DNA of 64,000 bases from Octopus bimaculoides. Taxonomy: Eukaryota. Shown here in pieces: positions 17,081 to 64,000 of this stretch. The stretch is taken from the NCBI RefSeq assembly GCF_001194135.2, contig NC_068984.1:133648390-133712389 (forward strand). The letters are read 5' to 3'. The notes beneath the pieces were generated by a model. The model was not told where the DNA came from. It made no database searches and saw only the letters and a program-made list of their open reading frames with translations. The position numbers and the translations under genes were made by a program. The number at the start of each line of letters is the position of its first letter. Position 1 is the first letter of the stretch.

Positions 17081-17398
17081 NNNNNNNNNNNNNNNNNNNN
17101 NNNNNNNNNNNNNNNNNNNNNNNNNNNNNNNNNNNNNNNNNNNNNNNNNNNNNNNNNNNNNNNNNNNNNNNNNNNNNNNNNNNNNNNNNNNNNNNNNNNN
17201 NNNNNNNNNNNNNNNNNNNNNNNNNNNNNNNNNNNNNNNNNNNNNNNNNNNNNNNNNNNNNNNNNNNNNNNNNNNNNNNNNNNNNNNNNNNNNNNNNNNN
17301 NNNNNNNNNNNNNNNNNNNNNNNNNNNNNNNNNNNNNNNNNNNNNNNNNNNNNNNNNNNNNNNNNNNNNNNNNNNNNNNNNNNNNNNNNNNNNNNNNN
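17081..17398. other. Assembly gap (others: 19334-19590, 23744-23793, 49259-49356)
   Basis: Runs of N, mostly flanked by microsatellites or repeats. Confidence 1.
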
Positions 17399-23743: not shown

Positions 23744-23881
23744 NNNNNNNNNNNNNNNNNNNNNNNNNNNNNNNNNNNNNNNNNNNNNNNNNNGTGTGTG
23801 TTTAAATATATTATTTTATACCAAAAATTTGGCAAAAGAATATAGTATTTTCAATGGATCAGTTTTGAGCTCTATTTAAAG

Positions 23882-42423: not shown

Positions 42424-45400
42424 CTAAACGCAATTAAATGGCGGTTCACCACCATCATTATATTTTGCAGCAATGACAGTTCTGATATCTTTCATGGTAG
42501 TCTAAAAATTACAAAAATGTCATTTTGTCAGTAATATATTCAGTGCCTTAAATGAGAAAAATAAAATATTGTAAAGGTTATTACATTTTCTGATTACAAT
42601 TCAAAATGGAAATATTGGATTCTTAGAATCAATAACACTGTATAAGCCATTTATTGTGATCATTTTAGGATAGAGCCTTTTAGATAACATTAAGGAGATG
42701 ATATAACAATATTCTGTGCATGTCTTAGAGCCACTAATTTCCAATAACTAAATGATAATGATGATTTAGTAACACTGAACAAGATTATCATCAGCTGCTG
42801 TCAATTCATTTGAAGTGTGGCATAGCATTTTTACTTATTTCACTTTACATGGTTCAAACTTTAGCAGAAATAGTACAATAGATTCAATACATTATAGCAC
42901 TTAGATTTGTACTTCAGGATATCATCATCATCATTTAACATCTGCCTTCCATGCTGGTATGGGTTGAAAGTTTCTACAGGATCCATGAATTGGAGAACTA
43001 CATCAAACTCCACTATCTGCTTTGAAATGGTTTCTATGGCTGGATGCCCCTCCAAATGACAACAGTTTTACTGAGTGTATTGGGTGCTTTTTCTTGTGGT
43101 GCCAGCACTAGTGAGATGGCCATATAACTAGCAAGATTAAAAAGACCCCCTCAACTGAACGAGAGCATAACTGGTGCTCTGACAGCAACAACATTGAGGG
43201 TTCCAGTTGATCCAATCAATGTTAACAGCTTGTTCATGAAATTAACATGCAAGTGGCTAAGCACTCCACAAACAGGCACACCCTCAACATAGTTCCCAAG
43301 GAGATTCAGTATGGTACAAACTGTGACAAGGCTGGCCCTTTGAAATAAAGGTAATACTCATTTTTGCTGGTTGAGTGAACTGGAACAATATGGAACAAAA
43401 TGTCTTGCTTAAAGTCACAATGCACTGCCAAGAATTGCACTTTGTGACATTACAATCATGAGCCAATACTCTAACCACTAAGCCATGTGCCTTCACTGGG
43501 TCGTCATTTAACTTCCGCTTTCCATGCTAGCATGGGTTGGACGATTTGACTGAGGACTGGTGAACCAGATGGCTACACCAGGCTCCAATTTGATTTGGCA
43601 GAGTTTCTACAGCTGGATGCCCTTCCTAATGCCAACCACTCAGAGTGTAGTGGGTACTTTTACGTGCTACTGGCACAAAGACCAGTCAGTATAGTAAAAA
43701 GAGAGGCAGCATAATGCTAGATGTTGAGTGATTGAAGTAGGATATAGGGGTGGGAAATGGTTTCCTGCTGTAAAGGAGAGACATAGCTACCCCACATAAT
43801 ATAAAGGTGGGTGGAAGTAATTAGGGAGAAACTGGAAAGAGTAATAAAGATGGTGACACCAAGCTATAAGAAGGTAAATAGAAGAGAAAGTAGAAGTGGA
43901 TCAGGAATGGTAGGTAGGTAGAGTTTGCAAGAGCATGGGATAATTGTAAGAAAAGGTAGTGAATTGTAAACAAGGACAATAGTAAAAGAGTTGGAGGGGA
44001 AGGGGGTAAGAAGCAGGAGTGGAGGTGACGACGGCGGCGGGGGGGGGCAGAGATCTGTAGTTATGCCATTTACTGTACTTGAGAAGACATGTCAAGCTAA
44101 GTGAAATTGTAGTCATGACCAATGCCAGTGACATGTGGAGTGGTTGGCATTAGGAAGGGCATCCAGCCATAGAAACCAAGCCAAATCAGACTGGAGCTCT
44201 GTGCAGCTCTCTGGCCTATCCATCCCAGTCAGCCCATCTAACCCATGCCAGCTTGGAAAATGGATTGCTAAATGATGATGATGATGATGATATATATATA
44301 TATATATCATCATCGTTTAACGTCCGCTTTCCATGCTGGCATGGGTTCGACGATTTTCACTGAGGACTGCTGAACCAGATGGCTACACCAGGCTACAATC
44401 TGATTTGGCAGAGTTTCTACAGCTGGATGCCTTTCCTAACGCCAACCACTCCGAGAGTGTAGTGGGTGCTTTTACATGCCACCATATATATATATATATA
44501 TATATTGTGCAAATGTACATTTGTGTAAAATCAACTTGCTTGAACAGAATGTTTGTAAAATTGACCAATAACCCTAAACACCTCAAAGCAGATTATGTAC
44601 ATTTTCTCAATAATAAATGGAATACAAATTACCTTAAAATCAGGATATGGAATCCACTTCAGAGCAAGCAATCTCTTACGATCAGCCTTAGAAACTGATG
44701 ACAAGTATTTGGTAATTGGTTTGCATGTCTTGCAGGGGCCAAATAAGCGGTTTAGTTCTAAACGGATATCTCCTTCACCAACATACAGCGTTATCCATGT
44801 TTTACTAAATTTATACCAGCGAAGTACTATATAAACACCTTCCATGGATGTTGGTCGTGCATCGTACCTCTGAAATGTTGCATTATACAAACTGTCTACG
44901 AATGCTTCTGTTTTCTGTAAGAAGAGAACATTTCAAAATTTACGTTTCACAAAAGATGAAACAGATTTTTAGCTAAGATCCAAAAGCTACATCTAAAAGA
45001 ACATAATACAAAGAAAAAAAAAATCTAGTCAGCACAATCCTGAAATAGCTTCTGCAATATCTGGTTTAACAGATGAACAGTAGAAGTTAATAGTTAACAA
45101 ACATGCTGAAAAATGGAGTGCTTTTTCTTAGACAAGGGATTTCATCAGCTTATTTGCAATACTTACACTGTCTAATGGAGCTTTTGTTTTGTTTACTTGA
45201 GCAGGCGTGATAGTGGCCCCACCAGCTGGCCTAGAAATAACAATAAAATATTAGCATCAGACAAGACTTGGAGAAAAAAGTAGTGGATGCATTTAAATAG
45301 ACTGGTCAAATTAAGAAGAATTTACCCTGACTACTTTCAATACTATTTCACTTTTCTAGAAAGAGCAATATTTCCTTAATAACATTTCCTCATTGATCAT

Positions 45401-46989
45401 AATCATTTAACGTGTTTTCCATGCTGGCATGGGTTGGACGGTTTAACCAGATCCAAAGAGCAGGAGGATTGTGTCAAGTTCCAAAGGCTGCATTGGCATA
45501 GTTTCTGTGGCTGGATGCCTTTTCTAAAGTCAACTACTTTAACATTAATTTTTAAAAAAAAGAAAAAATGCATCGGCCTAGAATTTGAGAAAAAAAAAAT
45601 TATTATTAACTTGTAAGCAAGAAAATTCCACAATATTTTCTCGAAGGCATGTTCCTTTAAATGCACACACACATCAAGTGGCAAAAGTAAAGAAAAATTC
45701 ACTTAGGCTAGATAAAGTTACCAACTGGAAGATTGTTTGGCAATATGGAAATTAGATGTGTTGACTTTCGTTTTTTTAAAGATGTCAGTATTAAAAGTTA
45801 CTGGTACTAATTTATGTTTACATAAGATTAAATTCCAAGTGCATAAAATTTTGCATTTCAAATTTATTAGAAACTGTGCTAAGGGCGAACTTGAAAGGTT
45901 TAAGATTATTCCAACAAAGTATCTTATTTGCCGCAACAAGAAAGCCCGAAGTTCTGACAAGTAATCGGTTTTACTAAGACTGAAACTTGCCATCAAATTA
46001 CCTAAAAAGAATAATTGTATGTAAAAAGTGAACAGATAATGAAACGACGTCAGAACTGGAATAAAAGCTCTAACTCCGAGAGGTAGAATTTCATACAGAG
46101 CTAGCAAGAGATGGATCGTAAGATTGCCATATATATATATATATATAAAAACTTCTTACAATCTTTTTAATCTTATGAGGAGTTAAATGAATTGGATTTG
46201 AGGATAGAAGATAGCTTATTAAGTTAAAGCACAAAACCGGTCATTGTAATACGGTCTCGATCGTTTAGTGAGTATTCACCAAAGTTTTATCAATACTTTC
46301 ATACGGGAAAACTATCATATATCTACTAACGTCATCATCTCTTACGAGACTTAGCTGTCTGTTCAAATGAGTAAAGATATATTATAAAGAAAGAAATACA
46401 TTAATAACTTTTAAAAAATCCAAAGTGTCTGGTAATATTGACACGTGACAATTTCTTAGAACTTAAAATACATTTTCTCAGAGCAGCTATTTATAATACC
46501 TTCTTAGAAGCTCTTCAATTTGAGAGAAGGGAACAATCGGTTATACTGAACCTAATACTTTGGACCATTCTTCTTGAATAGTACCCTATATTTCATCGAT
46601 CCGAAAGGATGAAAGTTGATCTAGGAGGGATTTGAACTCAGAACGTAATGGTGCAAGAATAAATATTTCTTTATAAATTAATAATTATAAGAAATAGAAA
46701 AAAAAAGCTTAACAGAATAAATTTGAAGAATGATGTTAGTTTGAGAATTAAATTCAGTAACGAAGATGATCTCTCTCCTAGTTAACTAATTATTTAAATA
46801 GGACTCTGGGTGATATATGGAGAAATGAAGAAAGAAACTGACGAAAAAGGGAGGGAGAGGATACGAGGAGACATGTGCTGCTTTAGGTTATGTGGCCACC
46901 ATGTTGTAAAATAAAGTACAAAAATTACATGATTTTCAACCAACTTACGGTTTGTAAGCTTGCTTATTCTTTTTGCGTGCCATAGTCAT
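42424..46989 (-). CDS. Uncharacterised small GIY-YIG-like protein; complement(join(42424..42501,44633..44869,45167..45230,46949..46989)), 139 aa
   Basis: Four exons with canonical sites and matching phases (2,0,0): MTMARKKNKQAYKPPAGGATITPAQVNKTKAPLDSRYDARPTSMEGVYIVLRWYKFSKTWITLYVGEGDIRLELNRLFGPCKTCKPITKYLSSVSKADRKRLLALKWIPYPDFKTTMKDIRTVIAAKYNDGGEPPFNCV*. The GVY...YVG...DIR...PPFN pattern resembles the GIY-YIG superfamily. The three 3' exons are well supported; the first exon is less certain. Confidence 0.75.
45722..46001 (-). CDS. Alternative/cassette exon of the GIY-YIG-like gene (ATG at 45993 gives a 216-aa form)
   Basis: Acceptor attattctttttag| at 46001 and donor TG|GTAACT at 45722 (phase 2, in frame with exon 45230). 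Open frame MASFSLSKTDYLSELRAFLL...KQSSSW of 90 aa. Confidence 0.45.
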
Positions 46990-48702
46990 TTATCAATATC
47001 ACAAGAGTTGGTCTGCTTTTAAAAGGTAGAGCGACAAAAAATAGACAAAGTTTGTGGAACTCTCAGAGAACAGGTCAGGTGTAGATGGAGAGCCACGCTT
47101 GAAAAGGAAGGAGGAGATAATTGCAACGTTCAACTACGCCTGCGTCATTATACTATGGAATGAAAGAATAGTCAGAATTGCAGAAGTATGGATGGACAGA
47201 TATTTGGGATTAATTCTCAGCTAATCACGAAATGCAATCTCTAAGTTTTTACTGATTGGAACAGGACTTTATTAAATCTCGAGAAAACCATTGTCGACAA
47301 ATCACATGAAATATATATATATGTAAAAGAAGTAGGAATTTAAGCGTATTCCTCTACTATCTTTGTTTCCTCATAACTATCACAGAAATGGATATTAGTG
47401 GTAGGGAATGAGTGGCACAATTGTGTAGCTATGCCAATTTAAGTATGGATGCTAGTACGACAAATAATTCTAGTTCTTTTCTTGGCGATCATGTTGGTTT
47501 CACTCCCGCAAGTTTTGATTTTCCTTAGGTTTTGCAGTTGAACGATTATAATAATAATGGTTCCAAATTTTGGCTCGGGACCAGAAGTTTTTGAGAGGAG
47601 GGAAATCGATTACATCGACCCTAGTTCTTGACATGGACTTCTTATTTTACCGACACCGAAAGGATGAAACGCAAAGTCGACCTCGGCGGAATTTGAACTC
47701 AGGACGTAAAGACGGATTAAATACCGCTAAACAATTTTGCCCGGCGTGCTAACCATTTTGCCCGCAGCTCGCTTAACAAATTCGTTTTTCGTTTATCGCA
47801 CAATTTTTGTTTTTGTACATCACTTATTCTTTTGCTTTCCGCTCAATCATAGTAGCCAGAGCCTATATGTAACCGCCCGACGTACTAGAAATAATAACCA
47901 AGTCTCCTTCATGAATCAGCAAAAATCAAATCGCTTCCAAACAAATATACTTTTTCCTTAAGCATTTGTATGTAAGAAAGATGGAAATAAATAGATTAAC
48001 GAAATGAAATAACTTTTAAAGATTTTAAAAATTATGTTATAGACCGAAAGTTAAAAAAACAGGAGACGGTGAATATAAAACATGTTTTGTTAAAACATTT
48101 ATTTGATATATAGAGCCATTTAGAAAGTACGAAATTTACTTTAAAAAAGGTTGTGACAGAGGATATAAAGCAGTAATAATTTAGTTCCCAAACCGGTTGA
48201 ATGTGTGGTTTACAAGCTCGTTTTGCAACCATGTGGGTTTGGGTTCAGTCCCACTGCGCGACACATTGAGCAAGTATTTCCTACTATAGTCCCGGGCCGA
48301 CCAATATGCAGACGGGAACTGTAAGGAAGCCCGTCGCTAGTATGTGTATACACATTTGTGTGTTTGTATTTGTCTCCTATCACGGCCTGACAACCAGTGT
48401 TGGTTTGTTTGCGCCCCCGTAATTCAAGGGTTCGGCAGAAAGAGACCAATAGAACAAGTACCAGGCATTAAAAAAATAAGTCATTGGGGGCGATTTATTC
48501 TACTAAACCCTTTACGGTGGTATCCTAGTATGACAACAGTCCAATGAGTGAAACATCTAAAAGATAGAAAATAAGTTTTTCCTTGCATCTCAGCAGAATT
48601 AATTTAGGTCAATAATCATACCAATGTCTTTTAATTCCTTGCTGATATTTGATCATTTCCAGGAACAATTTTAGATCCTGTGATGGACCAGCGTCATCCC
48701 AT

Positions 48703-50451
48703 CCAGGAAATATATATGCCAAAGAAACGGGGAAATCAGCCCTAAGGTCCTTATGGAGTAATGTGGACTAACCATAACCTTTTTTGTTTTTATAATTGAC
48801 ATTAATTTCCACCTTATTCGGTCCTTTTCTAGGACAACCTGTGATGAGGCAGCACCTGAATACCACAAATTGGATAGTCCAAGAATTTTGAGTTCTAGAT
48901 GTGGTCTTCCGCAAAACTACAGCTTTGTGTATTGAATTCTTCTCTGCTACAGATCTTCCTTCACCTTATGCATTTCTTATGCTAAAGCAACAAATAAATT
49001 AATTAGTAAATATGTATCTTTTCCTCAATTTAAAATTCAAATTTTAGATGAACCCAGAAATAGTACAGATCAAGAATTTTTCCACCCTTTTAAATGTTAT
49101 ACATGAGCCAGCAATTCATCATTGAGCCATGTTGTAGACTTTATACATCACTTCCTATGTGTCATTTCTTGAAGTTTGCTCACCTTTTGAGTATTGCGTT
49201 TCAGATCCACACCACAAACATTTGCACTGTCTGAACTTTTTTAGATGTAATTGTAAGGNNNNNNNNNNNNNNNNNNNNNNNNNNNNNNNNNNNNNNNNNN
49301 NNNNNNNNNNNNNNNNNNNNNNNNNNNNNNNNNNNNNNNNNNNNNNNNNNNNNNNNGGGCTGGTAGAATCATTGGTGACCAGTGATGAAGTCACAGGAAA
49401 AAAGTCACAATTTTGGCTGGGACACAATTAATTTATGGTGGCCAGTAATAAAGTCACAGGAAAAAAAGTCACAATTAATTTATGGGATCTGGACAAAACC
49501 CCCTCAGACACACACACACACCCGCCCGAACAAAACCCCTGTGACTTTTTTACCTGGATTCAAGCCATTAGCACGCCAGGCAAAATGCTCAACAGCATTT
49601 CATCAATCTTTATGTTCTGTGTTCACATTCTGCCAAGGTTGACTTTGCCTTTCATCCTTTTGAGGTCGATAAATAAGTACCAGTTGAAGACTGGGATCGA
49701 TGTAATCAACTTATCTCCTCTCCCAGAATTTCAGGCCTTGTGCCAAAATTTGAAACCGATATTCTTATAGTTGTAACCCTTTGAAGCATAGACCAATTTG
49801 AGTTGGCTGAAATTTCCTGTTTCTGAGGTGACATAAAATGTTACTTTTTCCTAACACATTCACTGCTGTTTTCTGTTGCTATACATTCATCTACAGTAGC
49901 CAGATAGCTTCTGTGGTTGCTTGACCGAACCTCCCTTGACAATAGCAATGAGCAAATCATTTGTTCCTCCCCCATTTTTTTTTTTTTAGGAGGCACATGG
50001 CTTAGTGGTTAGGGTGTTGGACTCATGATTGTAAGATTATGGTTTTGATTCCTGGACCAGGTGATGCATTGTGTGCTTGAGAAAAACACTTCATTTTTGC
50101 ATTACTCTAGTCCACTCCAGGGAATATATATGCCAAAGAAACAGGGAAATCAGCCCTAAGGTCCTTATGGAGTAATGTGGACTAACCATAACCTTTTTTT
50201 GTTTTTATAATTGACATTAATTTCCACCTTATTTGATCCTTTTCTGGGACAACCTGTGATGAGGCAGTACCTGAATACCACAAATTGGATAGTCCAAGAA
50301 TTTTGAGTTCTAGATGTGGTCTTCCGCAAAACTACAGCTTTGTGTATTGAATTCTTCTCTGCTACAGATCTTCCTTCACCTTATGCATTTCTTATGCTAA
50401 AGCAACAAATTAATTAATTAATATGTATCTTTTCCTCAATTTTAAATTCAA
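48703..50451 (+). repeat. ~335-bp direct repeat pair (48703-49040 and 50117-50451) on either side of an N gap
   Basis: Near-identical CCAGG(A/G)AATATATATGCCAAAGAAAC...TCCTCAATTT(A/T)AAATTCAA with a few substitutions. Confidence 0.9.
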
Positions 50452-51499
50452 GCTTCTAACCCTACCAAGGAGAAGTGATTATCTCCCTTTTATTAACTGC
50501 CTGATTGGGAACATTGCAGACTCTCAAATTAGTTTATTTTAAAGTTCATATATTTTCTATATGTAGTTATTATATATTAGTGTCAAACTGAAATGAAAAT
50601 GTAAGAAGTAGAAGTATTGGGGTGAAACATTCCAAAAGCAAAACTGTCAAATGAGGTGTGACAATGTACTAGCACCAAATCCTTTTTCAGTGTCAGAAAT
50701 GAAGAGGAAAGGACCTTCACTCTAAAATTATTTTACTTCGGTCAAATCGTCCAACCCATGCTAGCATGGAAAGCGGACGTTAAACAATGATGATGATGAT
50801 GACATTTTAAGTGGACAAAAAGTTAAAGCAAAAGTGACATGCTGTTTAATCTCGGGCTAGCCTTGATCAGGCAGATCTAAGATCAAAAACATTGTAGCAT
50901 TGCTACAATGTTTTCACCCCTGCTCTTCCCTTCTCACGCTTCCTCTTCTGGTTAGTCCCTTGACCATTGACGTCATGGCCCTCTTCCGGCTCATCCCCAC
51001 AGCTATTATACTTGCTAATTATACTGCTGAGGCAACAAAAGCTGTCTGCTATTTCTAGTGAGCCATCCATGCATTTAAGAAAATCTGTTTCCAATGTACA
51101 ATACTTGGGTTCTGACTGCATATAATGAATGCACAGCACTCATTAACAATTGGCAGAATTTTATTTCACTGCACAAATATTTTCCATGTTGGTCATAAAT
51201 TAAAGATGCATCAACAAAGTTTACACACTGAAAGGATAATTGTATAGCTCTTATGAAAAGTTGATAAAGAAAGCTTTGTAATTATGCTGCCAAGACAGGA
51301 GAAAATATACACACTGGTGAACTAGAGTTGCTGTCAAGGTTGATTTAAAAAGTCATGAGAACAATTGTTAAAAGGAGCAAAATGAAAATGTGGCTAGCTT
51401 AGCTGCAGGTGGCCACAAACTGAAGTTTGGCACTCAAAATGTACCTATTTATAAGTTTCGTAAAGGAGTGTTTGAGCAACTTCTTGAAAGATGTATCAC

Positions 51500-52500: not shown

Positions 52501-53307
52501 TAGATAGATTAAAAGAGTTCGAGATCTAACCGTCACATTTTACTTCGTCATAGTCTAGCTAAAAGTACAATATCCAAAGTATCGTTTCGTTTTTAAGACG
52601 GTAGAATATGACTTGAAAGAGATTGGATTCTAATTCTTGTAGCTCGAGCAACTATGTTGACTCGCTCGATTATGGCGATAATAAAGTTCGACTGCTATTT
52701 CAAGCGAGGCATGGAGATGCTCTCATTACATTGCCTTGCTTCGTTGCAGGTCAAGCATGATCGATATTTGTTCAAAGGTATCTCAGTTTTAACCACACCA
52801 TCCTTTTGTATATCAAAGATACATTGTCCAGTGTATTTTGACAGGAAAAATGTCCTTTGAGGGAAATTTAGAAATATTTCCAGCCGTTCAAACGACCATG
52901 TAATAGCTCTCTCTGCGGTTGACTTGGTTTTAACACTCATCTAAATACCTGTACTTAATGCTTAAACTTGTTACATTAACAGGTGGATAGCATCATAAAG
53001 AGCTAAAATACTTTGCAAACAATGATCTGTAACTTTTTCTTTCGTGAGTTTGTATTGGTTCTCCTTTATACACCTACAGCCCTTAGTCGATCTTGAAACT
53101 GATTTTATTCGAAAAACTTGTTTACAACTTTGTCATTTTAAGAAATAAAAATATAACAGCAAACACATTTTCAAGCCAATGAAAAACACCGACGGAATCC
53201 CCAAATGTATTAATTGTTTATACATATAATAATTTAATATTATTTGAAGTATATAAAAGAAAAACATCATAATCAAAAAAATTAAGGTGCAATGTTGACA
53301 ATAAATC

Positions 53308-53333
53308 GCGGGAAAACCCTCTCAAGTCACGTG
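53308..53333 (+). promoter_or_regulatory. Candidate MSH6 proximal promoter elements: E2F site and E-box
   Basis: GCGGGAAA (reverse complement TTTCCCGC, E2F consensus) at 53308-53315 and GTCACGTG at 53326-53333, about 90-115 nt before the ATG in a CpG-retaining patch. Confidence 0.5.
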
Positions 53334-53422
53334 GCTTTTGACAACGCGGTAGATTTCTGTGTGTCTGTAGTTTGGTTTACAAATACATTCACTAGTGCCT
53401 TCGTTGACCGTAAGAAGTAAAC

Positions 53423-56400
53423 ATGGGGAAAGTCAACACGATATTTTCTTACTTTTCAAAGACACCCAAGAAGACTACCGAGAATCAAGTGCTTTCTCCG
53501 AAGACTCCGAGTAATTCAGGTAGCAATAGCAATCTACAAGCAACATCTAACAACACCACACCAACTAGTAGTAAAAAGACGAATGAGAAAAATGGCGAAA
53601 TTACTCCTGGTAAGACAGAGATGAATTAGCATGTTTTATATTTGCTATGATAAAAAATTAATGTTTAATTTTCGTAAAAATATCAGTAGACGTGATGATG
53701 TGGTAGCCATACATTCGTTGTACAGGGTGTCCAGTAGCAAAGTTATTGATTGAGTACCTGAGAGTGAAATAGAAACATGAGTAAATATAAAAAATATTTA
53801 CAAATTTTCTATCGTCTATATCTATAAAATAAATTATAAAATTTAAAATTTGTGTTGCCCTTAATATTTTGCTGACTTTAGTGGTAGCTTTAATTTTTGC
53901 TTTAACTTGGTTTTCAACATAAAGAAACAAAACTTTTCTTGGACTCGAAGGAAGAATCAATATCTTAGTTCATTGTCTTGCAATCTAATTGGATTTAATC
54001 TAGCATTTTTTTGTCTGCTTTTTCGACTTTGTTTAAATACCATTTATTTTAATGAGAATGGTTTTCTAAATATGACTGAAAACAACCTGCTGTCTTTAGT
54101 GAAAGGGTCTTTTAATTCGATGTCATTCTCATGTAGTGTTGTTAAGTTAAATATGTTTTGGGCCAATACTGGCCGAAATCAATGTATGAAAAAAAAAAAA
54201 AACTTCCACAGTCGATACAAATCTAAGGGAATGCAATGTTATAGAGAAGTAGTTCATTTGATAGTTTGTGAAGGGTCACAAAAGTTTTATTGTTAGTATC
54301 GCAGGCAGTGCCTCCGCACAGACTAAATCGAATGACTGAAACTAGTTAATACCCTTAAAATTTCATAGTTTATAGTAGCGGCGTAGCTAGAGTGTATGAT
54401 CCTGGGACAAGATCTTGATTTTGCTTTTCCGTCGGCAAAGTCTATATAGGCCCAGAAGTGCTGCGACCCTCTCCTCCTCGTCATTACTCTACTGGATTTA
54501 TATAACCTTGTCATTGAGTATCATGGTCCCTTATATTTCACTATTTCACTCTCTACATTCTGATGAATAATTGCCGACTTAATTGAAGTCTTCAAAAAGA
54601 AAAAAAAAAATGCATTTTTCAAGGAGAGGTGCGATTCTGCATTAGCCCGATCTGTGCATTATATCATTTTTCTTCCGGCGAAATTCTGGTTTAAGTAGAA
54701 TCTCTTTATACTATCATTACTTATAAACTGTTGCGTGTAAACAATGTAAATAAAATACCTCGCTACATTCAGAAATATTTACGGTTTGTGAAACACCTTA
54801 ATCTAGGTTTGTTCAGATAAAGTAATTCATATCAAAAATTTGGACCCTGAATTCTTCTCTACCTACACACTGGGGATAGCTGCAAACTGCAGACTACGTT
54901 TTAGTATAAAGAAAATATACCACTTATTCGGTGTCTTTAATTCATATGTCAGAAGAGAAACAGTTTTGAAATATATATCATAGTTCAATCATTGTAGCAT
55001 TGTAGTTATTGCCAGAGAAATAACAACCTGTCCTCTCATCCCCTCTTTTTCCCTTACACTGACCCAAATTTTCCTGCCTCTACAAAACTTAAAAACCTAC
55101 TAGCCAACAAGAAAGCTTCTAGGGGGGTTACTCTATCTGCTAGAAATCGTAGCGAAATATTCACTCTTAATAGGATACATTGGATAATGTAGTTCTCGAT
55201 ACATAGTCTTGAAAGCGACTGTGCAATCTACCCCTATCTACTTCTACTCACTTCATACCTTGAGGGGCCACCTGGACACTTTATCATCACTATCTCTGAA
55301 GCTCCTACTGATCATTCTCACTCTCTCTACTGAAAGTGAGCAGCCATGCAGCTCCTCTACAAGAATCTGTTCTGCCCTCCCACCTCTCATTTTAACCCCT
55401 CATCCCCTGCCATAGAGCTAGTTCCCCTCCTTAAGGGTTTGTAACCTTTTGAGATGCATGGTAACCTCACTAGTGCTGTCGCACATAAAAAAAGCACCCA
55501 GTACATGCTATAAAGTGGTTGGTGTTAGGAAAGGCATCCAGCTGTAGAAACCATACCAAAGCAGACAATGGGGCATGATGTAGTCCTTGGATCCATCGAA
55601 TTCTATCAAACCATCCAACCCATGCCAGCAGAGAACATGGATGTTAAATGATGATGGTGATGATCCGGTGCTCCATTGTATAAAGTAGTGAGTGTGTGGC
55701 TTTCTCTTAGTCTTTAACCAACTACCTATGGGTTGTAGGTCTATTTGATCAGAGGTGATGTGATGTTGCAAGTGACATATTTTTACTTTTTTAATTCCAA
55801 AACAAAAATATACTGTGTTAATGTGTGTTCCTTGAATATTTTAGTTCCTGATTTTTTTTTTGAAACAGTTCCCTTCAATGTTCTTGTTTGAGAGAATTAA
55901 ATTTGACTTCCATTGCAACTTTTCCATAGCATTTTGGGTTGTTTAATGTAGAATGAGATAGAGTGAAGTCGTTATTTTAATTACGAATAAGGTTTCCTGA
56001 AATGGAACTAGTTTTTTCTTTTTCAATTACAGTAACTTACAGTTATATGAACCAACAATGGCGATTTTTAGGAATTCTTCCAGTTTTCAGATAATTTCTG
56101 GGCAATGGGATTCCTACCTTATGTAGAAAAAGAAATGCAATTAAAAAATGTTCTCAAGACGGAGATAATATCTAGTTGTGATGCTGAGTTGAATGATCAG
56201 TTCTTTTATAACAACACTTTTGGTATATTATTACCATGGAAACAGAATTTTTCTCTTGGTGTTTTCAATTAATTCAGTTCCTAATGTTTGTTTTTTTTTT
56301 TCTTGCAGAATTTGAAGTTGGTGATATTGTATGGTCAAAGCTTGAAGGTTATCCATGGTGGCCTAGCATTGTATGCAACCACCCAACTTCTAAGGTTCAC

Positions 56401-57340
56401 ATCAAGAAAGGCAAAGTGACGGAGATTCATGTTCAATTCTTTGATGACCCAATTTCTAGAGCATGGGTTAAAGCCAGGTAGATTTATTCATTTTGCTTAT
56501 TTTTATTGTTTTGTTTCACTATTAAAGGTAAAGGTTACCTTCTAGAGTCAGGCCAACTCATTAGGGCTGGTTTCCATGATTTATAAATTCCCCACCTGGA
56601 TGGGATGCCAGTCCATCACAGTGTTTCACTATTGTTGTAGAACTAATCAAGTTAATAACTCTATATTTATTTCCTCTCATTTTAATGCATTGGGTGCTTA
56701 TATACATCCAGATAGTCTTATATGTTATTGTTGTTTAGGCCTCAAGTCAACCATGATAGAGCAGAACTATGACCAAAGATATTACCCTAACCCTAATGTC
56801 CTTTTTATTTTGTATATCTAAGACTACATTGTCTAATAATTCTTTTCTCTTTAAGACAGTTGGTTGTGAGTGAGAGATATTTGGTTGCTATTTCTTGTAG
56901 AAGTAGGTGTTATACATGGGGATTCTCTTCTGCTGCTTTTCCCTGCAACTCAGTGTTAGTTGTACTCTGCATGTTCATTGAATCTTTTAAAAGAAAGTTA
57001 CTCTTGTAAGTTATGTCCAAAGATTCTCTTCCACTGTTCATCACTACAGCACATAAGTAGACCAATTTCTGACTAGCTGACTCTGAGGTAAATTTCTTGC
57101 CGGAAATGTGTCATAGAATAATGCAGTCCTGAATACACCATTGTTTACTAAAAAAAAACCCCAAAATCATGACTTGAATATAGTTGATCATGTCTGCTCA
57201 GTCAGGGCGTTTTGGGTATAAACACATTTTTCTGATCCCCCTTACATTCTCTCAAGTATTCCTCAGAAACTTTATCTCCTCCAATTTATTCTTAATAAGG
57301 GTACCCATTTTATAAGCATACTCTTATGACACCACTCTTC

Positions 57341-57379
<39 letters not shown>

Positions 57380-59698
57380 TCAGTTTTTATTCGATTCTCC
57401 ATTTTAGATTTGTGAAGCCATTTACTGGGGCTGATGCCAAAGAAGCTAAAACTGGTGGCCAGTTTTTCTCAATGGATATGTCTCAAAGGAAAGCAACCAA
57501 TGATGCTGACAAGGCAGTGAAAATGACAAAAGAAGATAGACTTGGGCTTATTACTGAACTTCAGCCATCTGAAGATGAATTTGAAATGGACGACTTAGAT
57601 GGTGAGTTGGTCTTCAAATATAAGGTGTAGTGATTCTGTTAGGCTGGTTTTTTTTAGATGGTGTGAGAAGGCTGTTGCAATGTGATTGGTAGCATAGACA
57701 GTGTTTTAAAAATAATTTTAGGTGATCTGTGTTAGGATGCATTTGTTGCATTTTGGACAAAGAAGGTTGGTGATAAACAATTCTGACGGAGGATTTGAAA
57801 CCGTATCATGAAAATTGTTTGAAAACAATTATTCGAAAAACAGTTATTCGAAATAAATATAATTTGTGTACTTGATTTTTAATTTTATCGTTTTTGTTTA
57901 AATGAAATAAAAAATTTAGAATAATTAACATTTCGTATAATTGTCCTTTTGAATAATTTTCATTCATTTGAATTTTCCATTCGAATAAATGTTTGTCAAA
58001 TAATTGTTTTGGAACAATTATTTTCGAACAATATTCACATAATCTTTGAAACAGACTTCATGTTTGTTATAGAATCTTATGGAAAAATGTGATTAGAAAT
58101 AAGGAAAGAATAAATATCTAAAGTCTTGAAAAATGGTTACTGCAGGCCTATAAGAATGTTGATATTGTGGTTGACATTGGCATTCGTTTTTTTACACGTC
58201 ACTTTATTGTTATTTTTTATATTGTTTTATTAGATATTTTTGATGAAGAAATGGAAGAAGGTGATTCAGAAAAGAGCAAGGAAAATTTGGATGTATCTAA
58301 TACAGTGAAAGAAAAGAGTTCTAAGGTAGGAGTTTAGAAAAATGTTAACTATAGTTTACCTAACAGCCTCTGTGTCCATGGTTAACCAGTCACTAATTTT
58401 TAATACATTTAATCACACCAGCAAAATCTTTTGTGGCTATATTGCTATTAAATGAAGGTGTATGTCATAGTGGTTTAAATATTCAGCTCATGATCACAGT
58501 GTCATGGGTTCAACTCCTGTACTGGGCAGCTTAGGTCCTTGAGCAAGACACTTCATTTCATGTTGCTTCAGTCTAAAAATGTGATGTCTAGACAAGGGTA
58601 CACACAACAGGTTTCTTTCAGTTTCCATTGACTAAATCCACTCACAAAGCTTTGGTCAGTATGGGGCTATAGTAAAAAAAAACACTTGCCCGAAGTACTA
58701 TACAGTGATACTGAACTGAAGACCACATGGTTAGGAAGTAAGCTTTTTAATCATACTGCCACATTTTTACCTATATCCACTATATGTGCCATGTGTCTAT
58801 AACCAGTATATTTTTGTTAAATAGAATGTGGACCTGTTTTCGATTATTAGTTAGAGGTGTTGCTTTTTTTTGCTTCAGTGTTCTTACATAAATAAATACA
58901 TACATGTCTGTTATCTCTCTGTTTGAAATTTTATGTCAAAGAATTCTTATAAGATTTTAATTTGCTTTATTTTGTAGTCCAAGGAAGATGAAAGCAAAAG
59001 TTCAAAACCACCCAAACGTAATGCAAACAAACGACGCAGAATTATTGTAGAACCAGACAGTGGTGATTCCAGTAAGTTTTTAGTATACTGAATCTTTGTT
59101 ATCTTCTACTCAATACTTGAGATATGCCAATGTCTTTGACTAGTGTCTGTCACTCATGAAGTACACTTGATTGATATTTGGTGGGGAAATGATTCATTAT
59201 GGTCTCCAGTTCAGTCCCACTGCATGGCCCCTTATGCAAATGTCTTCTACTGTAACCTTGGGCCGACCACAGCCTTTTGAGTGGATTTGGTAGATGGAAA
59301 CTGAAAGAAACCTGTGTATGTTCATTTGTCCCCCACCACTGCTTGACAACCTGTATTGGTGTGTTTACATCCCATTAACTTAGAGGTTTGGCAAAAGAGA
59401 CCAGTAGAATGAGCACCAGGTTTTAAAAAATTATTTGTTGGACTAAAATTCTTCAAGGTGGTGCCCCAGCATGGCCACAGTCTAATGACTGAAACAAGTA
59501 AAAGATTAAAAAAAAAACAGCTAAAAAGATATGGCTGGTCTTGCATACTGAGTGATTTGTTTTTTTATATTGGCTTTTCCATGCTGGCATGAATTGGCTG
59601 ATGACTTGCTGAAGTAAATGAATTATTGCTATGCAAGAACAGTCAGATCACCTCCACCACTGAACACATATGCAAAATACAAAGAAATAAATGATTGG

Positions 59699-59737
<39 letters not shown>

Positions 59738-62700
59738 CGTTACTTTGCAGACGTTAAATGATGATGACGATGCTGATATTTGTCTTGTGATAAACCAGTT
59801 TACTTTTCATCATTTAGGTGATGATTACAAAGCTTCCTCTGGTTCTGAGAGCAACTCAGATAGTGTAAGCAGTGGAGTTGATGAGGATAAATTATCTGAA
59901 ACAGGGTCAGAACCTGAGGCGTCACCTGTCAAGGTAGGTGTTGTTTGTTTTCTTTTCATTTCAACTATCTAAAAAGCTCCAGTGCTTTTTTTTTTTTCTG
60001 AACTATGTTTTTCAGATCTCTTGCAGGTGAAACAAAAAAAGAAAAATAGTTAAATAGTAATAGGGGCAGGAGTAGGCCTACAAAGGTCTTTGGTACTGCA
60101 TACTTCTAAGTAAACCACACAAAAATAATTAATTTTGGCTATAAAGTGAAGATACTATTGACTAAAGGTGTTTAAACTTAACTAATATAAGCCATTGCAT
60201 TCTTCTGGACAAAGTTCATGACCTTGTTTTAGTTTTCCTGACAAACTAAAGTTTTGTTCTTCATATTTGTGATGTAAATAGACATCAGCTTTAAAAGCAG
60301 TTTTTCCAAAAAACATACAAGTGTTTGTTTTACAAATTTTTGAAAATTTATTATTCACATCAGCATGGTTAAAATGCTGGTCAAAAATGAAAACAAAAGG
60401 ATAATGAAGGTTTTGAAACAAAATTTGGCATTATTTATTGAAAAATGGAAGTTATGTTCAAACAACTCTGATAATCATCTTGTTTTATCTATGTACAAAC
60501 AGAAAGCATCTCGGAAAAGAAAACTGCCTGGTTCTACTCCTACAAGTGTTCAGAAGTCTTTATCTTCAAGTTCAGTTACTCCAGAACGTTCTCCTTTTGT
60601 TGGATCTATAAGCTCAGCTACAAAATCTAAACTGTCTCTTTTCTCAGCTCCTGATTCTGTAAGTATTTGAATCTTCATCTAAAAAGTGAGATTTACTGGT
60701 GTTGTTCTAATGGTAGTTGATTTGTTATAGGATCTTAATTTCTGTTGACAGAAGTGTTGGGTGTCATGGGTTCAAAAGAGATCAATACTCATTCTATCAA
60801 AATATCCCTTCTCCCTCTCAATTTTCTGTAGAGCTTTATTCCCTTCATTTTTAAACACTCAGTAAATTTCAGCGGAGGTTTAATTTAGTGAGCATGCTTT
60901 GTGCACAGCCAGTCTCACTCTCTTCAAACTTGTGTCAGTCTGGTGCAGGATTTGTATGTAGCTACCTTCTCTCAGATGAGTAGCTAAAGGGACCCATCTG
61001 CTCTGGGTTTGTTGGAGTGTCCGTGAATGACCTTCTGGTCACTGATAGCTGGAACCCTGCCTGACAAGTACTACTACTCTGGGTCAGAGTAGATCTTGGA
61101 ACAATGGTGGCTTTGAGGTGGTTCCACCCTCCTCAAAACGGCACCCCACTACTGGATACAGTTTAAAGTCACCAAGGACTTAAATCATATGATGTTAGTC
61201 ATAACTAGTAGCAATATAAATCCACCCAGTTTAGTACTTTATTTTATATCCCACTTTGAATAAATAGCAAAGTTGATGTTGGTGTAATTTGAATTTACAA
61301 TGTAAAGGACCATAAATAAATCCCACTAGGTATTTTGTTTGATGCCTTACCGATTCTGCCATTCCACCACCATATATGTCTATTTCAGTTTCTTCATAAG
61401 TTTCAACCATTTTTGTTTTAGTCTTCTCCTTCAGCTGGAGACAAAATGGAACCATCAACATATATGCATATGACCTTGGACTTCTTGAAACCAGACAAGT
61501 TGAAGTAAGCATGCTTTAAAAACCTTTTTAAAACCATTTCTGCATTTAATCAACTGTGATTCTAATGTAGTTTATATTGCAAAATTGCATTGTGTTGTTA
61601 GCTTGCATACTAGTGAATTTGACTTTATAGCCAAGGCAGGGAGCTAGTTCAAGATGTCTTGTCATTTTGGATAGCTTCAGTCCATGTTGATCAATTGAAC
61701 CTTTAAAGTAGAATAACCAATAACCAATCAAATACATACTGCTAAGCCACAGAACAATAGCAGCTGATAGAACTGACATTTTGATTACTGGTACTTGTAT
61801 TATTAGTGGTTTTAAATTCTAGCACAACGCCAGCAATTTCGATTGTATCAGCTCCATTACTTAACTGGTTACTTACTTTATGAACCCCTGATGGATGAAA
61901 GGAATGCAAAGGGCCAGAAGAAATGCCACCAAGCATTTTGTCCAGCATGTTTACAATTCTGCCAGCTCACCACCTTTATATTATCAATGTAATTAAATAA
62001 ACATTTCAACAACTATACATCCTAAATCATTCTTTCTATCAATTCTTAAAATAATGAAGAATTTACTAAAAGATGTTTTCCTGAGGCTTAAAACAGTGTC
62101 ATCGTCCTTTACAAGACTGCCACATTATGTTGGCATATTAACATTACTAAAATAGCTTTGCCATTAAGTTGGTGTTTGGAACATGAAATTTTGATGGCAG
62201 ATTTTAATTTAGATCACTTTAAAAACAAGGTTTGTATTGCACAACTAAAGGTAACCTCAGGTGATTTGGTATCAAAAAGGGTTAATAAAACTTGACATTT
62301 TGGTTGTTTTAAGAACAAGTTAGGGGAAAAGATTAATATGGCTGCCTAATTTTCTGAGGTAGCATAGATTGCTAACTGACAAGGTATGTTCTAACAGGCA
62401 ATAAGATAATGGCTGGAATATTCAAGTAACAAATGGCTTTAAGAAAATGTTATTTTTTCATCAATTATTTTGTTTCTTTTTCTCACAAAATCTACAGGGA
62501 CAAAAACGGACGCCTGAAAACTCATCCAGATTATGACAGCCGTACTCTGTATGTTCCAGACTCTTTCAAGAGTAAAGTTACTCCTGTAAGTTATATCCAA
62601 GAAGTCCACCAAAAAATTTGTTAATTTTTGATTTGCAACTCTTTAATTCTTACATTAGTTTTGTTTGATCAACAGGTGTTAATTTAATGTCTGTCTTTTC

Positions 62701-64000
62701 ATGTTGGCATGGCTTAGACCTGAGTAAATTTGAGGCATGATTGTCATGGATGGTTGTTTTTCAAGTGTGGAAATATTATTCTGGAAGACTTTGAAAGCAC
62801 AGAACTAGCAGATAATTGGTTGACAAGAAATGTCACCAAATTTCAGCACCAATAGCCTGAACATAAAATAACATCATTGTAACTCAACTGCAAACTACCA
62901 GTTCAATATAGTCTTTTAAATATTGACACACACATAAAGATGTGAGCATGTCTGTCAAATTCCTTCACAAAGCATTTGTCAGGCTGGGGTTATAGTAGAA
63001 GACTATATCCAAAGTAGTACATAGTGGGACTGAATTTGTAGCTACATGGCTGAGAGACAAACTTTGTAACAACACAACCTTAAGAATTTTTATTAATCCT
63101 TGATAAAATAGAGAATTTGGCAAGAACTATCAATTGAATAGTTTTAAGTTTGACTCCAGTACCTTCTGTGCTTGCTTAAGTTTACCTGGCTATTAGGAAT
63201 AACTAACAGATCATTTGGGATTGTCACCTGAAATAGACCAGCATCTATTCTATCCAGTGGGGATTTTTTCTTTCATCTGTGAATGTAGAGCCAAGCTCTA
63301 GCCATTTCAAGTTTTTGTTGACCTCTCTTCAATGCCTTGGACAGCAAAGGGAATATATATATATCCAGGTGTGTGTGTGCGTGTGCAATAAAAAGGTGGT
63401 AGAAGAGTAATTTGTTGGTTCTGAGTTGAGCTAGCATGGGTTGATTACACTTGGATAGTGTTTGTTGGTGGGAAGGAGACAATATTTATTATTTTGTGAT
63501 CATATTGTCAGAATGTGGGTTGCTTATACATTTTTCTTTTGCTTGTTTATTTGTGACTTTGGGTGTATTTGGAATGTTTGTGGCCTACATGAAATTGTTG
63601 TCAGGTGGTTTGCAAAGAGTTTTATCTCCTATCCCCTTAACTCTTTTGATACCAACCTGCCTGAAACCGGCTCTGTAGTACAGATGTCTTATTTTCATAA
63701 GTTCTGAATTAAAATCTTCCAAACGTTAGTCCCAATTTATGTTCCTAACACTAGCTTAACGATAACTAAGTTGTTTTACTAAATTCTTTGTTATAATTAA
63801 AATTAATCGAAAGAAACACAGCTTCTCAAAAGAAATACAGTAATGAAAGGGTTAATGCATGGGAACCTGAAGATAATCATTTGATAGATGATAATTCTTA
63901 ATTTTATGTAATGATTCTTTGATCTCCAATACAACTTATTCCATTCCAGGCTATGCGGCAGTGGTGGGAGATGAAATCAAATCATTTTGATACTATCCTG
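53423..64000 (+). CDS. MSH6: DNA mismatch repair protein MSH6, 5' part (partial); join(53423..53609,56309..56477,57408..57601,58234..58325,58978..59071,59818..59933,60503..60658,61422..61504,62498..62585,63950..>64000), first 410 aa
   Basis: N-terminal PIP-like box KVNTIFSYF. PWWP domain (FEVGDIVWSKLEGYPWWPSIV...HVQFFDDPISRAWV), then an acidic/Ser-rich linker with KRRR. Then MSH6-typical HMTLDFLKPDKLKDKNGRLKTHPDYDSRTLYVPDSF...TPAMRQWWEMKSNHFDTIL. All splice phases are consistent. Confidence 0.96.
57803..58045. mobile_element. Probable MITE with TTCGAA sub-repeats in MSH6 intron 3
   Basis: ATTGTTTGAAAACAATTATTCGAA at the left is imperfectly inverted by AATTGTTTTGGAACAATTATTTTCGAACAAT at the right. 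Confidence 0.45.

What the first reader, a model, noticed from the sequence alone, without database searches (positions are those of the whole stretch)
42424..46989. Unrecognised small GIY-YIG-fold protein gene with apparently substituted catalytic residues
Seen: four minus-strand exons splice in phase to a 139-aa ORF. None of it is a recognisable SINE or LINE, and only one exon appears in the ORF track. Known: GIY-YIG nucleases have GxY...Y(I/V)G, a catalytic Arg about 8 residues after the Gly (UvrC YVGKAKNLKKR, I-TevI R27), a metal-binding Glu on a late helix, and a C-terminal P-x-x-N. Here GVY, YVG and PPFN are present. The Arg position reads DIRL-E-L, and the helix expected to carry Glu reads KTTMKDIR. 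Inference: a stand-alone GIY-YIG-like pseudo-nuclease, or one with altered chemistry, with a basic N-terminal tail and a CKTC pair. It does not resemble SLX1, ANKLE1 or a Penelope endonuclease in size or layout.
Basis: partly seen in the sequence, partly recalled or inferred. Interest (0 to 1): 0.85.

Follow-up and report, generated by a model that had tools for sequence, protein, structure and literature searches.

The report
Conserved mollusc gene, weak GIY-YIG likeness
The exons belong to a real, already annotated but uncharacterised Octopus bimaculoides gene for a small basic protein. It is conserved across molluscs, folds into a confident compact domain that only faintly resembles a GIY-YIG nuclease, and lacks that enzyme's catalytic residues, so it is probably a non-enzymatic binding protein.

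Summary
The four minus-strand exons with GT-AG borders exist. Exon 3, however, starts 45 nt further upstream (44914, not 44869). The product is then 154 aa, identical to RefSeq 'uncharacterized protein LOC106880171' of Octopus bimaculoides.

The gene is real:
- Argonauta and the gastropod Babylonia have the same four exons with the same phases.
- dN/dS between octopus and Argonauta is 0.16.
- The Sepia esculenta orthologue is an uninterrupted ORF in 10 RNA-seq assemblies.

It belongs to a small unnamed family: 17 hits among 1.84 billion representatives, covering cephalopods, a gastropod, a bivalve and unidentified samples.

No HMM library, PDB sequence search or Foldseek search gives a significant match. 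AlphaFold2 with the family alignment is confident (pLDDT 87, pTM 0.83) and gives the order beta-beta-alpha-alpha-alpha-beta-alpha. Sub-threshold signals point to GIY-YIG:
- Three phage GIY-YIG endonucleases are among the best BFVD matches (E 0.6-0.7).

Across the family, the first Tyr, the catalytic Arg and the Glu are not conserved. The 'CKTC' pair is specific to this octopus.

Best reading: a non-catalytic, probably nuclear, nucleic-acid-binding or adaptor protein, possibly a dead GIY-YIG derivative. In cephalopods it lies head-to-head with MSH6. Interest is moderate to low.

The parts
46949..46989 (-). Coding exon 1 (41 nt, ends in phase 2). ATG at 46989, with a second in-frame ATG at 46983 that aligns with the Sepia start. 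Encodes the Lys-rich tail MTMARKKNKQAYKP.
   Evidence: sequence, GT donor gtaagt. (the same 41-nt exon in Argonauta). (alignment with Argonauta and Sepia).
45167..45230 (-). Coding exon 2 (64 nt, ends in phase 0).
   Evidence: AG/GT borders. (a 64-nt exon in Argonauta, 61 nt in Babylonia, same phase).
44633..44914 (-). Coding exon 3 (282 nt), carrying most of the globular domain. The true acceptor is at 44914.
   Evidence: 154-aa RefSeq protein. (282-nt exon in Argonauta, 288 nt in Babylonia). (omega 0.12-0.13). (98% tblastn match over query residues 35-130).
42424..42501 (-). Coding exon 4 (78 nt including the TAG stop at 42424-42426). Encodes the last helix and the YN..GE.PPFN tail. Octopods stop here. 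Other members continue with an acidic stretch followed by [DN]FS[IL]L.
47047..47168 (.). Upstream block conserved among octopus, Argonauta and Sepia: TTCCATA.TAT at 47150-47160, CG.A.GC at 47138-47144, TCCTTTTC at 47101-47108. It is a likely core or bidirectional promoter.
   Evidence: blastn, octopus against Argonauta, 46950-47168. (three-species alignment). (Sepia transcripts reach the MSH6 5' end through this stretch).
42928..45538 (.). Five SINE-like repeat copies inside introns 2 and 3: 42928-43091, 43500-43690, 44138-44278, 44310-44482 and 45403-45538. They are not part of the coding sequence.

Best explanation
This is the single-copy Octopus bimaculoides gene LOC106880171. It has four coding exons and encodes 154 aa. 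It belongs to a small, unnamed, selectively maintained family found in at least three mollusc classes.

The protein is basic (pI 8.4-9.9 across members). It has three parts:
1. A Lys-rich, NLS-like N-terminal tail followed by a conserved [IL]K[LF]P.G peptide.
2. A roughly 100-residue alpha/beta domain: a helix, a long Trp-rich beta-hairpin, three helices, a third strand and a last helix.
3. A conserved YN.GE.P.FN tail. Most non-octopod members then add an acidic [DN]FS[IL]L peptide, which octopods have lost.

The domain has the element order of a GIY-YIG module and faint profile and structural similarity to one. The family does not conserve the first Tyr, the Arg or the Glu that GIY-YIG catalysis needs.

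I therefore think it acts without catalysis, as a nuclear nucleic-acid- or chromatin-binding (or adaptor) protein. It is most likely a degenerate derivative of a GIY-YIG-like module.

Shown: the gene model, conservation, selection, expression of the cuttlefish orthologue, the confident fold prediction and the absence of catalytic residues.
Inferred: nuclear location, nucleic-acid binding and descent from GIY-YIG.
For: Gene model and annotation.

Single copy, plus two decayed fragments.

Family: 17 hits at E<=1e-3 among 1.84e9 representatives. Named members come from Argonauta, Babylonia and Solemya.

Exon number and phases (2/0/0) are identical in Argonauta and Babylonia.

dN/dS is 0.159 at dS 0.86.

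The Sepia esculenta orthologue P0020 is an uninterrupted ORF in 10 RNA-seq run assemblies. Run identities come from PMC10442824, PMC9538352 and PMC10141105.

AF2 with 19 sequences gives pLDDT 87 and pTM 0.83, and all five models score 85-87.

GIY-YIG hints:
- The element order is beta60-69, beta74-84, alpha85-93, alpha101-108, alpha111-117, beta118-124, alpha132-142.
- hhalign scores 23.0, P=0.0026. It aligns G61 with the G of GIY, Y79-V80-G81 with YVG, and helix 85-93 with the Arg helix. None of 200 column shuffles reach that score.
- BFVD hits at ranks 17, 19 and 28 are GIY-YIG endonucleases, with 89-108 aligned columns, rmsd 4.7-6.1 and TMq up to 0.40 on a query whose first ~50 residues are tail.

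Non-catalytic: column counts (Arg column R in 1/19; GIY Tyr Y in 6/19; Glu region D/E in 9/19). Basic tails and pI are also.
Against: No significant match to GIY-YIG by any method:
- Pfam, PHROGs and NCBIfam are empty.
- The family profile against PDB is empty at E<=10.
- Foldseek against PDB has no GIY-YIG chain in the top 50, and the best E is 0.4.
- hhalign probability is only 2-12%.

The G of YVG is not conserved (10/19), while a Gly two residues later is invariant.

Column shuffling destroys any hairpin-helix pattern, so beating the shuffles does not prove homology.

Nuclear location and nucleic-acid binding rest only on charge and Lys-rich tails. No experiment or expression data for octopus itself could be reached.
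Confidence: 0.45

Rival explanations
1. The domain is an unclassified alpha/beta fold unrelated to GIY-YIG, and the GVY/YVG/PPFN letters are coincidence. The protein is a lineage-restricted adaptor. Its function would lie in its short linear motifs: the N-terminal [IL]K[LF]P.G peptide and the C-terminal acidic F-x-x-L peptide.
For: No significant hit was found in PDB or BFVD despite a confident model. All HMM libraries are empty. The invariant residues (P56, G61, G83, Y105, K121, W122, plus R55, W68, W75, L78) are not the GIY-YIG signature. The hairpin strands are about twice as long as I recall GIY-YIG strands to be (from memory). The acidic [DN]FS[IL]L tail is conserved in most non-octopod members.
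Against: The hhalign alignment falls exactly in the GIY-YIG register and beats 200 of 200 shuffles. The geometrically best BFVD hits include three GIY-YIG endonucleases. The order of elements and a P-x-F-N tail after the last helix match the GIY-YIG layout.
Confidence: 0.4
2. It is an active GIY-YIG-type nuclease with altered chemistry, in which other residues replace the missing Arg and Glu.
For: Y79 (17/19), G61 (19/19) and N152 (10 of 13 present) are conserved at positions matching the GIY-YIG Tyr2, Gly and Asn. A moderately conserved acidic residue (D134) sits at the start of the last helix, and invariant R55 and K121 could in principle supply charge.
Against: No conserved Arg, Lys or His sits in helix 85-93. 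The first Tyr is Phe in most members, and D134 is D/E in only 9 of 19. There is no match to any nuclease family. The catalytic Arg is essential in I-TevI and UvrC (established knowledge, from memory).
Confidence: 0.05
3. It is a domesticated endonuclease domain of a Penelope-like retroelement, which are abundant in this genome.
For: The octopus genome holds at least 149 PF01541 matches over Pfam's cut-off, mostly Penelope-type.
Against: hhalign of the family against 12 of those domains gives probability 0.2%, P=0.3. There is no CCHH-type Cys pattern, no reverse transcriptase nearby, and three introns at positions conserved between cephalopods and a gastropod. The locus is not among the PF01541 hits.
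Confidence: 0.03
4. It is a spurious gene model: chance ORFs with chance splice sites.
For: Only exon 3 is a long ORF. No octopus transcript could be retrieved.
Against: There are orthologues with identical exon structure, omega of 0.16, spliced cuttlefish transcripts, and a confident co-evolution-based fold (one search compared).
Confidence: 0.01

Closest known systems
GIY-YIG nuclease superfamily: UvrC N-terminal domain, and stand-alone ~100-aa UPF0213/YhbQ proteins (Pfam PF01541, clan CL0418)
   Same: It has a small stand-alone domain with the order hairpin, helix, helix(es), strand, helix. A Gly opens strand 1 and a conserved Tyr sits in strand 2. A P-x-[FY]-N motif follows the last helix. 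There is a weak hhalign match in that register and sub-threshold Foldseek hits to phage GIY-YIG endonucleases.
   Different: No search gives a significant score. The first Tyr, the catalytic Arg and the metal-binding Glu are not conserved. The hairpin is long and Trp-rich. There is an extra N-terminal helix and a docking peptide. Distribution is restricted to molluscs and a few unidentified samples. The gene has introns.
Penelope-like element GIY-YIG endonuclease domains (abundant in the same genome)
   Same: They occur in the same genome, and nominally share the same superfamily if the GIY-YIG link is real.
   Different: hhalign probability is 0.2%. The PLE domains keep Y, Y-I-G, R, H, E and N plus a Cys-rich insert. 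This family keeps none of the catalytic set.
SLX1 / ANKLE1 (LEM-3): the eukaryotic cellular GIY-YIG nucleases
   Same: They are eukaryotic nuclear-type proteins. This protein's neighbour in cephalopods is a DNA-repair gene (MSH6).
   Different: SLX1 has a C-terminal RING/PHD-type finger. ANKLE1 has ankyrin and LEM domains. Both match Pfam GIY-YIG clan models and keep the catalytic residues (knowledge from memory). This protein has none of these features.
Archaeal Argonaute PAZ domain (Pfam PF12212 PAZ_2)
   Same: Only a sub-threshold sequence hit: E=0.04 at 14 bits against a cut-off of 23, and P. furiosus Argonaute at E=1.3.
   Different: Only 2 of 19 members match. No Argonaute appears among the Foldseek PDB hits. 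I regard it as chance.

Membership tests
GIY-YIG nuclease superfamily | Significant match to a GIY-YIG clan profile (PF01541 and relatives) | tested here: not met
   There is no GIY-YIG clan hit for P0001 at E<=10, or for any of 19 members at E<=1. PHROGs and NCBIfam are also empty. As a control, phage G gp305 scores over the cut-off, and at least 149 loci in the same genome do too.
GIY-YIG nuclease superfamily | Profile-profile similarity to GIY-YIG alignments | tested here: inconclusive
   hhalign gives probability 2-12%, P=0.0026-0.021, in the correct register, and 0 of 200 shuffles reach the score. True GIY-YIG subfamilies gave only 4-86% with equally thin profiles, so the test has low power.
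GIY-YIG nuclease superfamily | Structural similarity to solved or predicted GIY-YIG domains | tested here: inconclusive
   PDB: no GIY-YIG chain in the top 50, best E 0.4. BFVD: three GIY-YIG endonucleases at ranks 17, 19 and 28, with E 0.57-0.73, TMq 0.25-0.40 and rmsd 4.7-6.1 over 89-108 columns. Nothing is below E 0.001.
GIY-YIG nuclease superfamily | Order of elements beta1-beta2-alpha1-alpha2-beta3-alpha3 | tested here: met
   The AF2 model has E60-69, E74-84, H85-93, H101-108, H111-117, E118-124 and H132-142. The GIY-YIG order itself is taken from memory of the I-TevI and UvrC structures.
GIY-YIG nuclease superfamily | Catalytic Tyr of the 'GIY' strand | tested here: not met
   The Y63 column holds F 10, Y 6 and L 3 of 19.
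GIY-YIG nuclease superfamily | Tyr and Gly of the 'YIG' strand | tested here: inconclusive
   Y79 is conserved in 17 of 19, but G81 in only 10 of 19. The invariant Gly is G83, two residues later.
GIY-YIG nuclease superfamily | Catalytic Arg in the helix after the hairpin | tested here: not met
   The column aligned to the Arg (E88) holds E5, L5, Q3, K2 and R1 among others. No other column of helix 85-93 holds a conserved basic residue.
GIY-YIG nuclease superfamily | Metal-binding Glu in the last helix, and Asn after it | tested here: inconclusive
   D134 is D/E in 9 of 19, and lies two residues out of register with the UvrC Glu when the K-Y pairs are aligned. N152 (P-x-F-N) is N in 10 of the 13 members that reach it.
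GIY-YIG nuclease superfamily | Divalent-metal-dependent nuclease activity | not testable with these tools
   Needs recombinant protein.
Penelope-like element endonuclease | Similarity to PLE GIY-YIG domains with their Cys-rich insert, linked to a reverse transcriptase | tested here: not met
   hhalign probability is 0.2%. There is no reverse-transcriptase ORF around the locus. Conserved introns are present.
PAZ_2 (PF12212) | Score over Pfam's gathering cut-off, and a PAZ-like fold | tested here: not met
   14.1 bits against a cut-off of 23, in 2 of 19 members. No Argonaute appears in the Foldseek results.

The most novel reading that the evidence does not exclude
The family is the first stand-alone, catalytically dead GIY-YIG derivative of animals. 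It would be a mollusc-restricted nuclear DNA-structure-binding protein. In cephalopods it shares a bidirectional promoter with MSH6, and it would act as an accessory or regulator of mismatch repair or replication-coupled DNA metabolism.
Probability: 0.1. Interest if true: 0.6.

Novelty: new variant of a known kind. Interest (0 to 1): 0.35.

Why it matters
If the GIY-YIG link is real, this would be an example of a nuclease module turned into a non-enzymatic binding protein in animals. It would also be a lineage-restricted partner candidate for the DNA-repair machinery, given the head-to-head pairing with MSH6 in cephalopods.

If the link is not real, it is a confidently predicted small fold with no solved or viral counterpart, a modest addition to the list of lophotrochozoan orphan families.

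It also shows that motif letters seen in one species (YVG, CKTC) should be checked against the family before being read as catalytic signatures.

Tried and rejected
- AF2 without an alignment failed (pLDDT 39), so only the alignment-based model was used.
- P0003, a 1114-aa repeat protein at E=1e-44 with 19 stretches, is a low-complexity repeat artefact and was left out.
- The PAZ_2 / P. furiosus Argonaute hits are sub-threshold, seen in 2 of 19 members, and have no structural support.
- TGF-beta-family prodomains and RsmI top the PDB Foldseek list but have TM 0.12-0.21 and rmsd 10-18 A. They are meaningless.
- The 'CKTC pair' as a metal site is not conserved.
- An apparently conserved 67-nt block at 50737-50802 between octopus and Argonauta turned out to be part of the SINE.
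- MSH6 adjacency as a deep synteny signal holds in octopus, Argonauta and Sepia. It is absent within 10 kb in Babylonia and Solemya, so it is cephalopod-level only.
- Further family members were sought with an alignment query and with P0008. These gave only 7 and 1 hits, with no new names.
- Octopus transcripts of the exact protein are not on record or are masked.
- The organisms of several RNA-seq samples (SRR22426710, ERR12047056, ERR6338309, ERZ26859072) could not be identified. P0011 comes from a field metatranscriptome of the red alga Laurencia pacifica, so its host is unknown.
- The C-terminal acidic F-S-I-L peptide looks like an LIR-type F-x-x-L motif. That is only a recollection and was not tested.
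Full report
**Observation.** On the minus strand, the four segments 46989-46949, 45230-45167, 44869-44633 and 42501-42424 are each bounded by AG and GT.

A second in-frame acceptor lies 45 nt upstream at 44914 (tcttcttacag|AAAACA) and has a far better pyrimidine tract. With it, the product is 154 aa and is letter-for-letter the NCBI protein 'uncharacterized protein LOC106880171 [Octopus bimaculoides]'. That protein's contig length (147,805,816) equals that of contig C4 of the window's own assembly. The gene is therefore annotated, though nameless.

The extra 15 residues are conserved in Argonauta hians, in the cuttlefish orthologue and in the wider family. They have omega 0.12 and form a confident helix.

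**Is it a real gene?** Yes.
- A six-frame search of the whole genome finds this locus as the only intact copy, plus two decayed fragments.
- Argonauta (L020) and the gastropod Babylonia areolata (L021) have four coding exons of nearly the same sizes (41/64/282/75 nt and 29/61/288/129 nt) with identical phases 2/0/0.
- Octopus against Argonauta gives dS 0.86, dN 0.136 and omega 0.159, similar in every exon. Intron flanks are only 59-77% identical.
- The orthologue P0020 (165 aa, 50% identical) is an uninterrupted ORF on contigs assembled from 10 RNA-seq runs. Three of those runs are named in papers as Sepia esculenta larval or juvenile transcriptomes: PMC10442824, PMC9538352 and PMC10141105. 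The cuttlefish orthologue is therefore transcribed and, presumably, spliced.
- Octopus transcripts themselves could not be retrieved.

**The family.**
- phmmer against 1.84 billion representative proteins returned 17 hits at E<=1e-3. One of them, P0003, is a repeat artefact.
- Named members are from Argonauta, Babylonia (XP_076456423.1) and the bivalve Solemya velum (KAL5013127.1).
- The rest come from unnamed RNA-seq or metagenome assemblies. One is from a field metatranscriptome of a red alga, so its host is unknown.
- Two more word-index searches added nothing.
- Invariant residues in the 19-sequence alignment A2 are P56, G61, G83, Y105, K121 and W122. R55, W68, W75, L78, Y79 and F93 are nearly so.
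- All full-length members are basic (pI 8.4-9.9). They begin with a Lys-rich stretch followed by [IL]K[LF]P.G.
- Most non-octopod members end with an acidic stretch and [DN]FS[IL]L, sometimes followed by another Lys run. Octopus and Argonauta stop right after PPFNCV.

**Is it GIY-YIG? Sequence libraries.** All libraries are negative.
- Pfam gives nothing from the GIY-YIG clan for the octopus protein at E<=10, or for any of the 19 members at E<=1.
- PHROGs and NCBIfam give nothing relevant.
- The family profile finds no PDB chain of interest at E<=10.

As controls, the same genome holds at least 149 loci over Pfam's GIY-YIG cut-off, none of them here. A GIY-YIG profile I built from tool-derived sequences (A3) also worked. 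Its sources were E. coli UvrC, Cho and YhbQ, phage YhbQ-like proteins and octopus Penelope-type domains. It finds UPF0213, UvrC, endonuclease II and I-TevI chains at E from 1e-23 to 1e-3.

**Is it GIY-YIG? Structure.** With the family alignment, AlphaFold2 is confident (pLDDT 87, pTM 0.83, all five models 85-87). It gives H35-46, E60-69, E74-84, H85-93, H101-108, H111-117, E118-124 and H132-142. From residue 60 on, this is the hairpin, helix, helices, strand, helix order that I recall for GIY-YIG domains.
- Foldseek against the PDB gives no match below E 0.4 and no GIY-YIG chain in the top 50. The top hits have TM below 0.27.
- Foldseek against BFVD also gives nothing below E 0.098.
- However, the hits that combine length with low rmsd include three GIY-YIG endonucleases:
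  - 'Intron endonuclease, group I' (rank 17);
  - Bacillus phage G gp305 (rank 19), annotated as a GIY-YIG endonuclease and over the Pfam cut-off at residues 4-91;
  - a 'GIY-YIG_SF' protein (rank 28; 108 columns, rmsd 4.7 A, TMq 0.40).
- The first ~50 residues of the query are tail, so a TMq of 0.40 normalised on 154 residues understates the fit of the domain. These remain non-significant matches.

**Is it GIY-YIG? Profile-profile comparison.**
- hhalign of the family against my GIY-YIG alignment scores 23.0 (P=0.0026, probability 11.6%) over family columns 56-95.
- It pairs G61 with the G of GIY, Y79-V80-G81 with Y-V-G, and helix 85-93 with the Arg helix.
- None of 200 column-shuffled family alignments reached that score (mean 10.0, maximum 18.5).
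- Other versions of the comparison gave 2-6%.
- With equally thin profiles, true GIY-YIG subfamilies scored only 3.7-86% against each other. The test is weak in both directions.
- With a permissive setting the alignment runs collinearly to the end of the domain, but without confidence.
- Against the Penelope-type domains alone, the probability is 0.2%.

My reading is that a GIY-YIG-like fold is plausible, at roughly even odds, but not demonstrated.

**Catalysis.** Whatever its origin, the family does not keep the GIY-YIG catalytic set.

| Position | GIY-YIG role | Residues across members |
|---|---|---|
| Y63 | Tyr of GIY | F 10, Y 6, L 3 (of 19) |
| E88 | catalytic Arg column | E 5, L 5, Q 3, K 2, R 1, others |
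| G81 | Gly of YIG | G in 10 of 19 (G83 is invariant) |
| D134 | acidic, start of last helix | D/E in 9 of 19, two positions off the UvrC Glu |
| Y79 | Tyr of YIG | Y in 17 of 19 |
| N152 | Asn of P-x-F-N | N in 10 of the 13 members that reach it |

Only Y79 and N152 behave like their GIY-YIG counterparts. No other column of helix 85-93 holds a conserved basic residue. The CKTC pair is specific to O. bimaculoides, since Argonauta has CKTF. An active nuclease is therefore unlikely.

**Mechanism proposed.** I commit to a non-enzymatic role. The protein is small and basic, with NLS-like Lys-rich tails and a rigid, Trp- and Tyr-rich globular domain. It would bind nucleic acid or chromatin, or dock partners through its conserved terminal peptides. 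It is possibly a dead GIY-YIG module. This is inference from composition, fold and missing catalytic residues, and nothing here tests binding or location.

**Genomic context.** On the plus strand of the window lies MSH6, whose product has PWWP and MutS I-V domains. Its coding exons are at about 53291-53615, 56308-56496, 57406-57600, 60500-60664, 61422-61505, 62496-62588 and 63950-64000. It diverges head-to-head from this gene.

The same arrangement holds in Argonauta. In Sepia, transcript contigs join the 5' end of an MSH6 ORF to this gene, with 178 nt between the two start codons.

About 180 nt upstream of the octopus ATG is conserved among the three cephalopods, with blocks such as TTCCATA.TAT and TCCTTTTC. 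This fits a shared promoter.

MSH6 is not within 10 kb in Babylonia or Solemya. The pairing is therefore a cephalopod feature and only a weak functional hint.

It is an uncharacterised, lineage-restricted protein family, of which molluscs have many. What lifts it a little above the ordinary is the confident fold without a significant structural neighbour, the collinear GIY-YIG hints, and the MSH6 pairing.

Noticed in passing
window 53291-64000 (+): This is the 5' part of the mismatch-repair gene MSH6 (PWWP and MutS domains), with coding exons at about 53291-53615, 56308-56496, 57406-57600, 60500-60664, 61422-61505, 62496-62588 and 63950-64000. It diverges head-to-head from the finding's gene. 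The arrangement is shared with Argonauta and Sepia but not seen within 10 kb in Babylonia or Solemya.
   Followed up: partly
L030 2700-3010 (Sepia esculenta transcript contig); window 47047-47168: In Sepia, an MSH6 ORF starting 'METPKK...' begins only 178 nt from this gene's ATG on the opposite strand, on the same RNA-seq contig. Argonauta's annotated MSH6 starts with 'MGKVNTIFSYFSKTPKK'. This suggests an alternative MSH6 first exon and a bidirectional promoter. The stretch contains GCATGCGC in Sepia and conserved blocks in all three cephalopods.
   Followed up: partly
L004 (G000:C4:19471659-19471859) and L005/L006 (G000:C25:3708539-3708714): These are two decayed copies of the gene elsewhere in the octopus genome. 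L004 is 35% identical, carries stop codons, and has the exon 3 and exon 4 parts adjacent without an intron, so it looks like a retrocopy. L005 is 65-68% identical, with a frameshift and a stop.
   Followed up: partly
window 42424-42426 versus orthologues: Octopus and Argonauta proteins stop right after PPFNCV. Sepia, Babylonia and most other members go on for 12-45 residues ending in an acidic [DN/P]F[SC][IV]L peptide, which looks like an F-x-x-L docking motif. Octopods appear to have lost this tail.
   Followed up: partly
window 42928-43091, 43500-43690, 44138-44278, 44310-44482, 45403-45538 (12 matches in the whole window): These are copies of one SINE-like repeat (…GGCATCCAGCTGTAGAAACTCTGCCAAATC…CCATGCTAGCATGGAAAGCGGACGTTAAAC…) in both orientations inside the gene's introns. 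Two of them (44138-44278 and 44310-44482) form an inverted pair. The same repeat caused a false 'conserved block' with Argonauta at 50737-50802.
   Followed up: yes
window 17081-17398, 19334-19590, 23744-23793, 49259-49356: These are assembly gaps (runs of N). The one at 49259-49356 lies between this gene and MSH6 exon 1.
   Followed up: no
window 5564-6010: This long low-complexity stretch reads as Lys/Glu/Arg-rich or Ser/Leu/Phe-rich ORFs on both strands. It is simple-sequence DNA and not evidently a gene.
   Followed up: no
G000 genome-wide: At least 149 loci match Pfam GIY-YIG over the cut-off (2261 first-look candidates). They are mostly Penelope-like-element endonuclease domains with a Cys-rich insert, and many carry stop codons.
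   Followed up: partly
L031 664-2613 (-), Sepia contig SRR20545806_38269: A 649-aa ORF lies upstream of the Sepia orthologue on one contig. It is not MSH6 by tblastn, and the 5' ends of the ten Sepia contigs diverge about 85-100 nt before the ATG. This suggests chimeric assemblies or several transcription starts.
   Followed up: no
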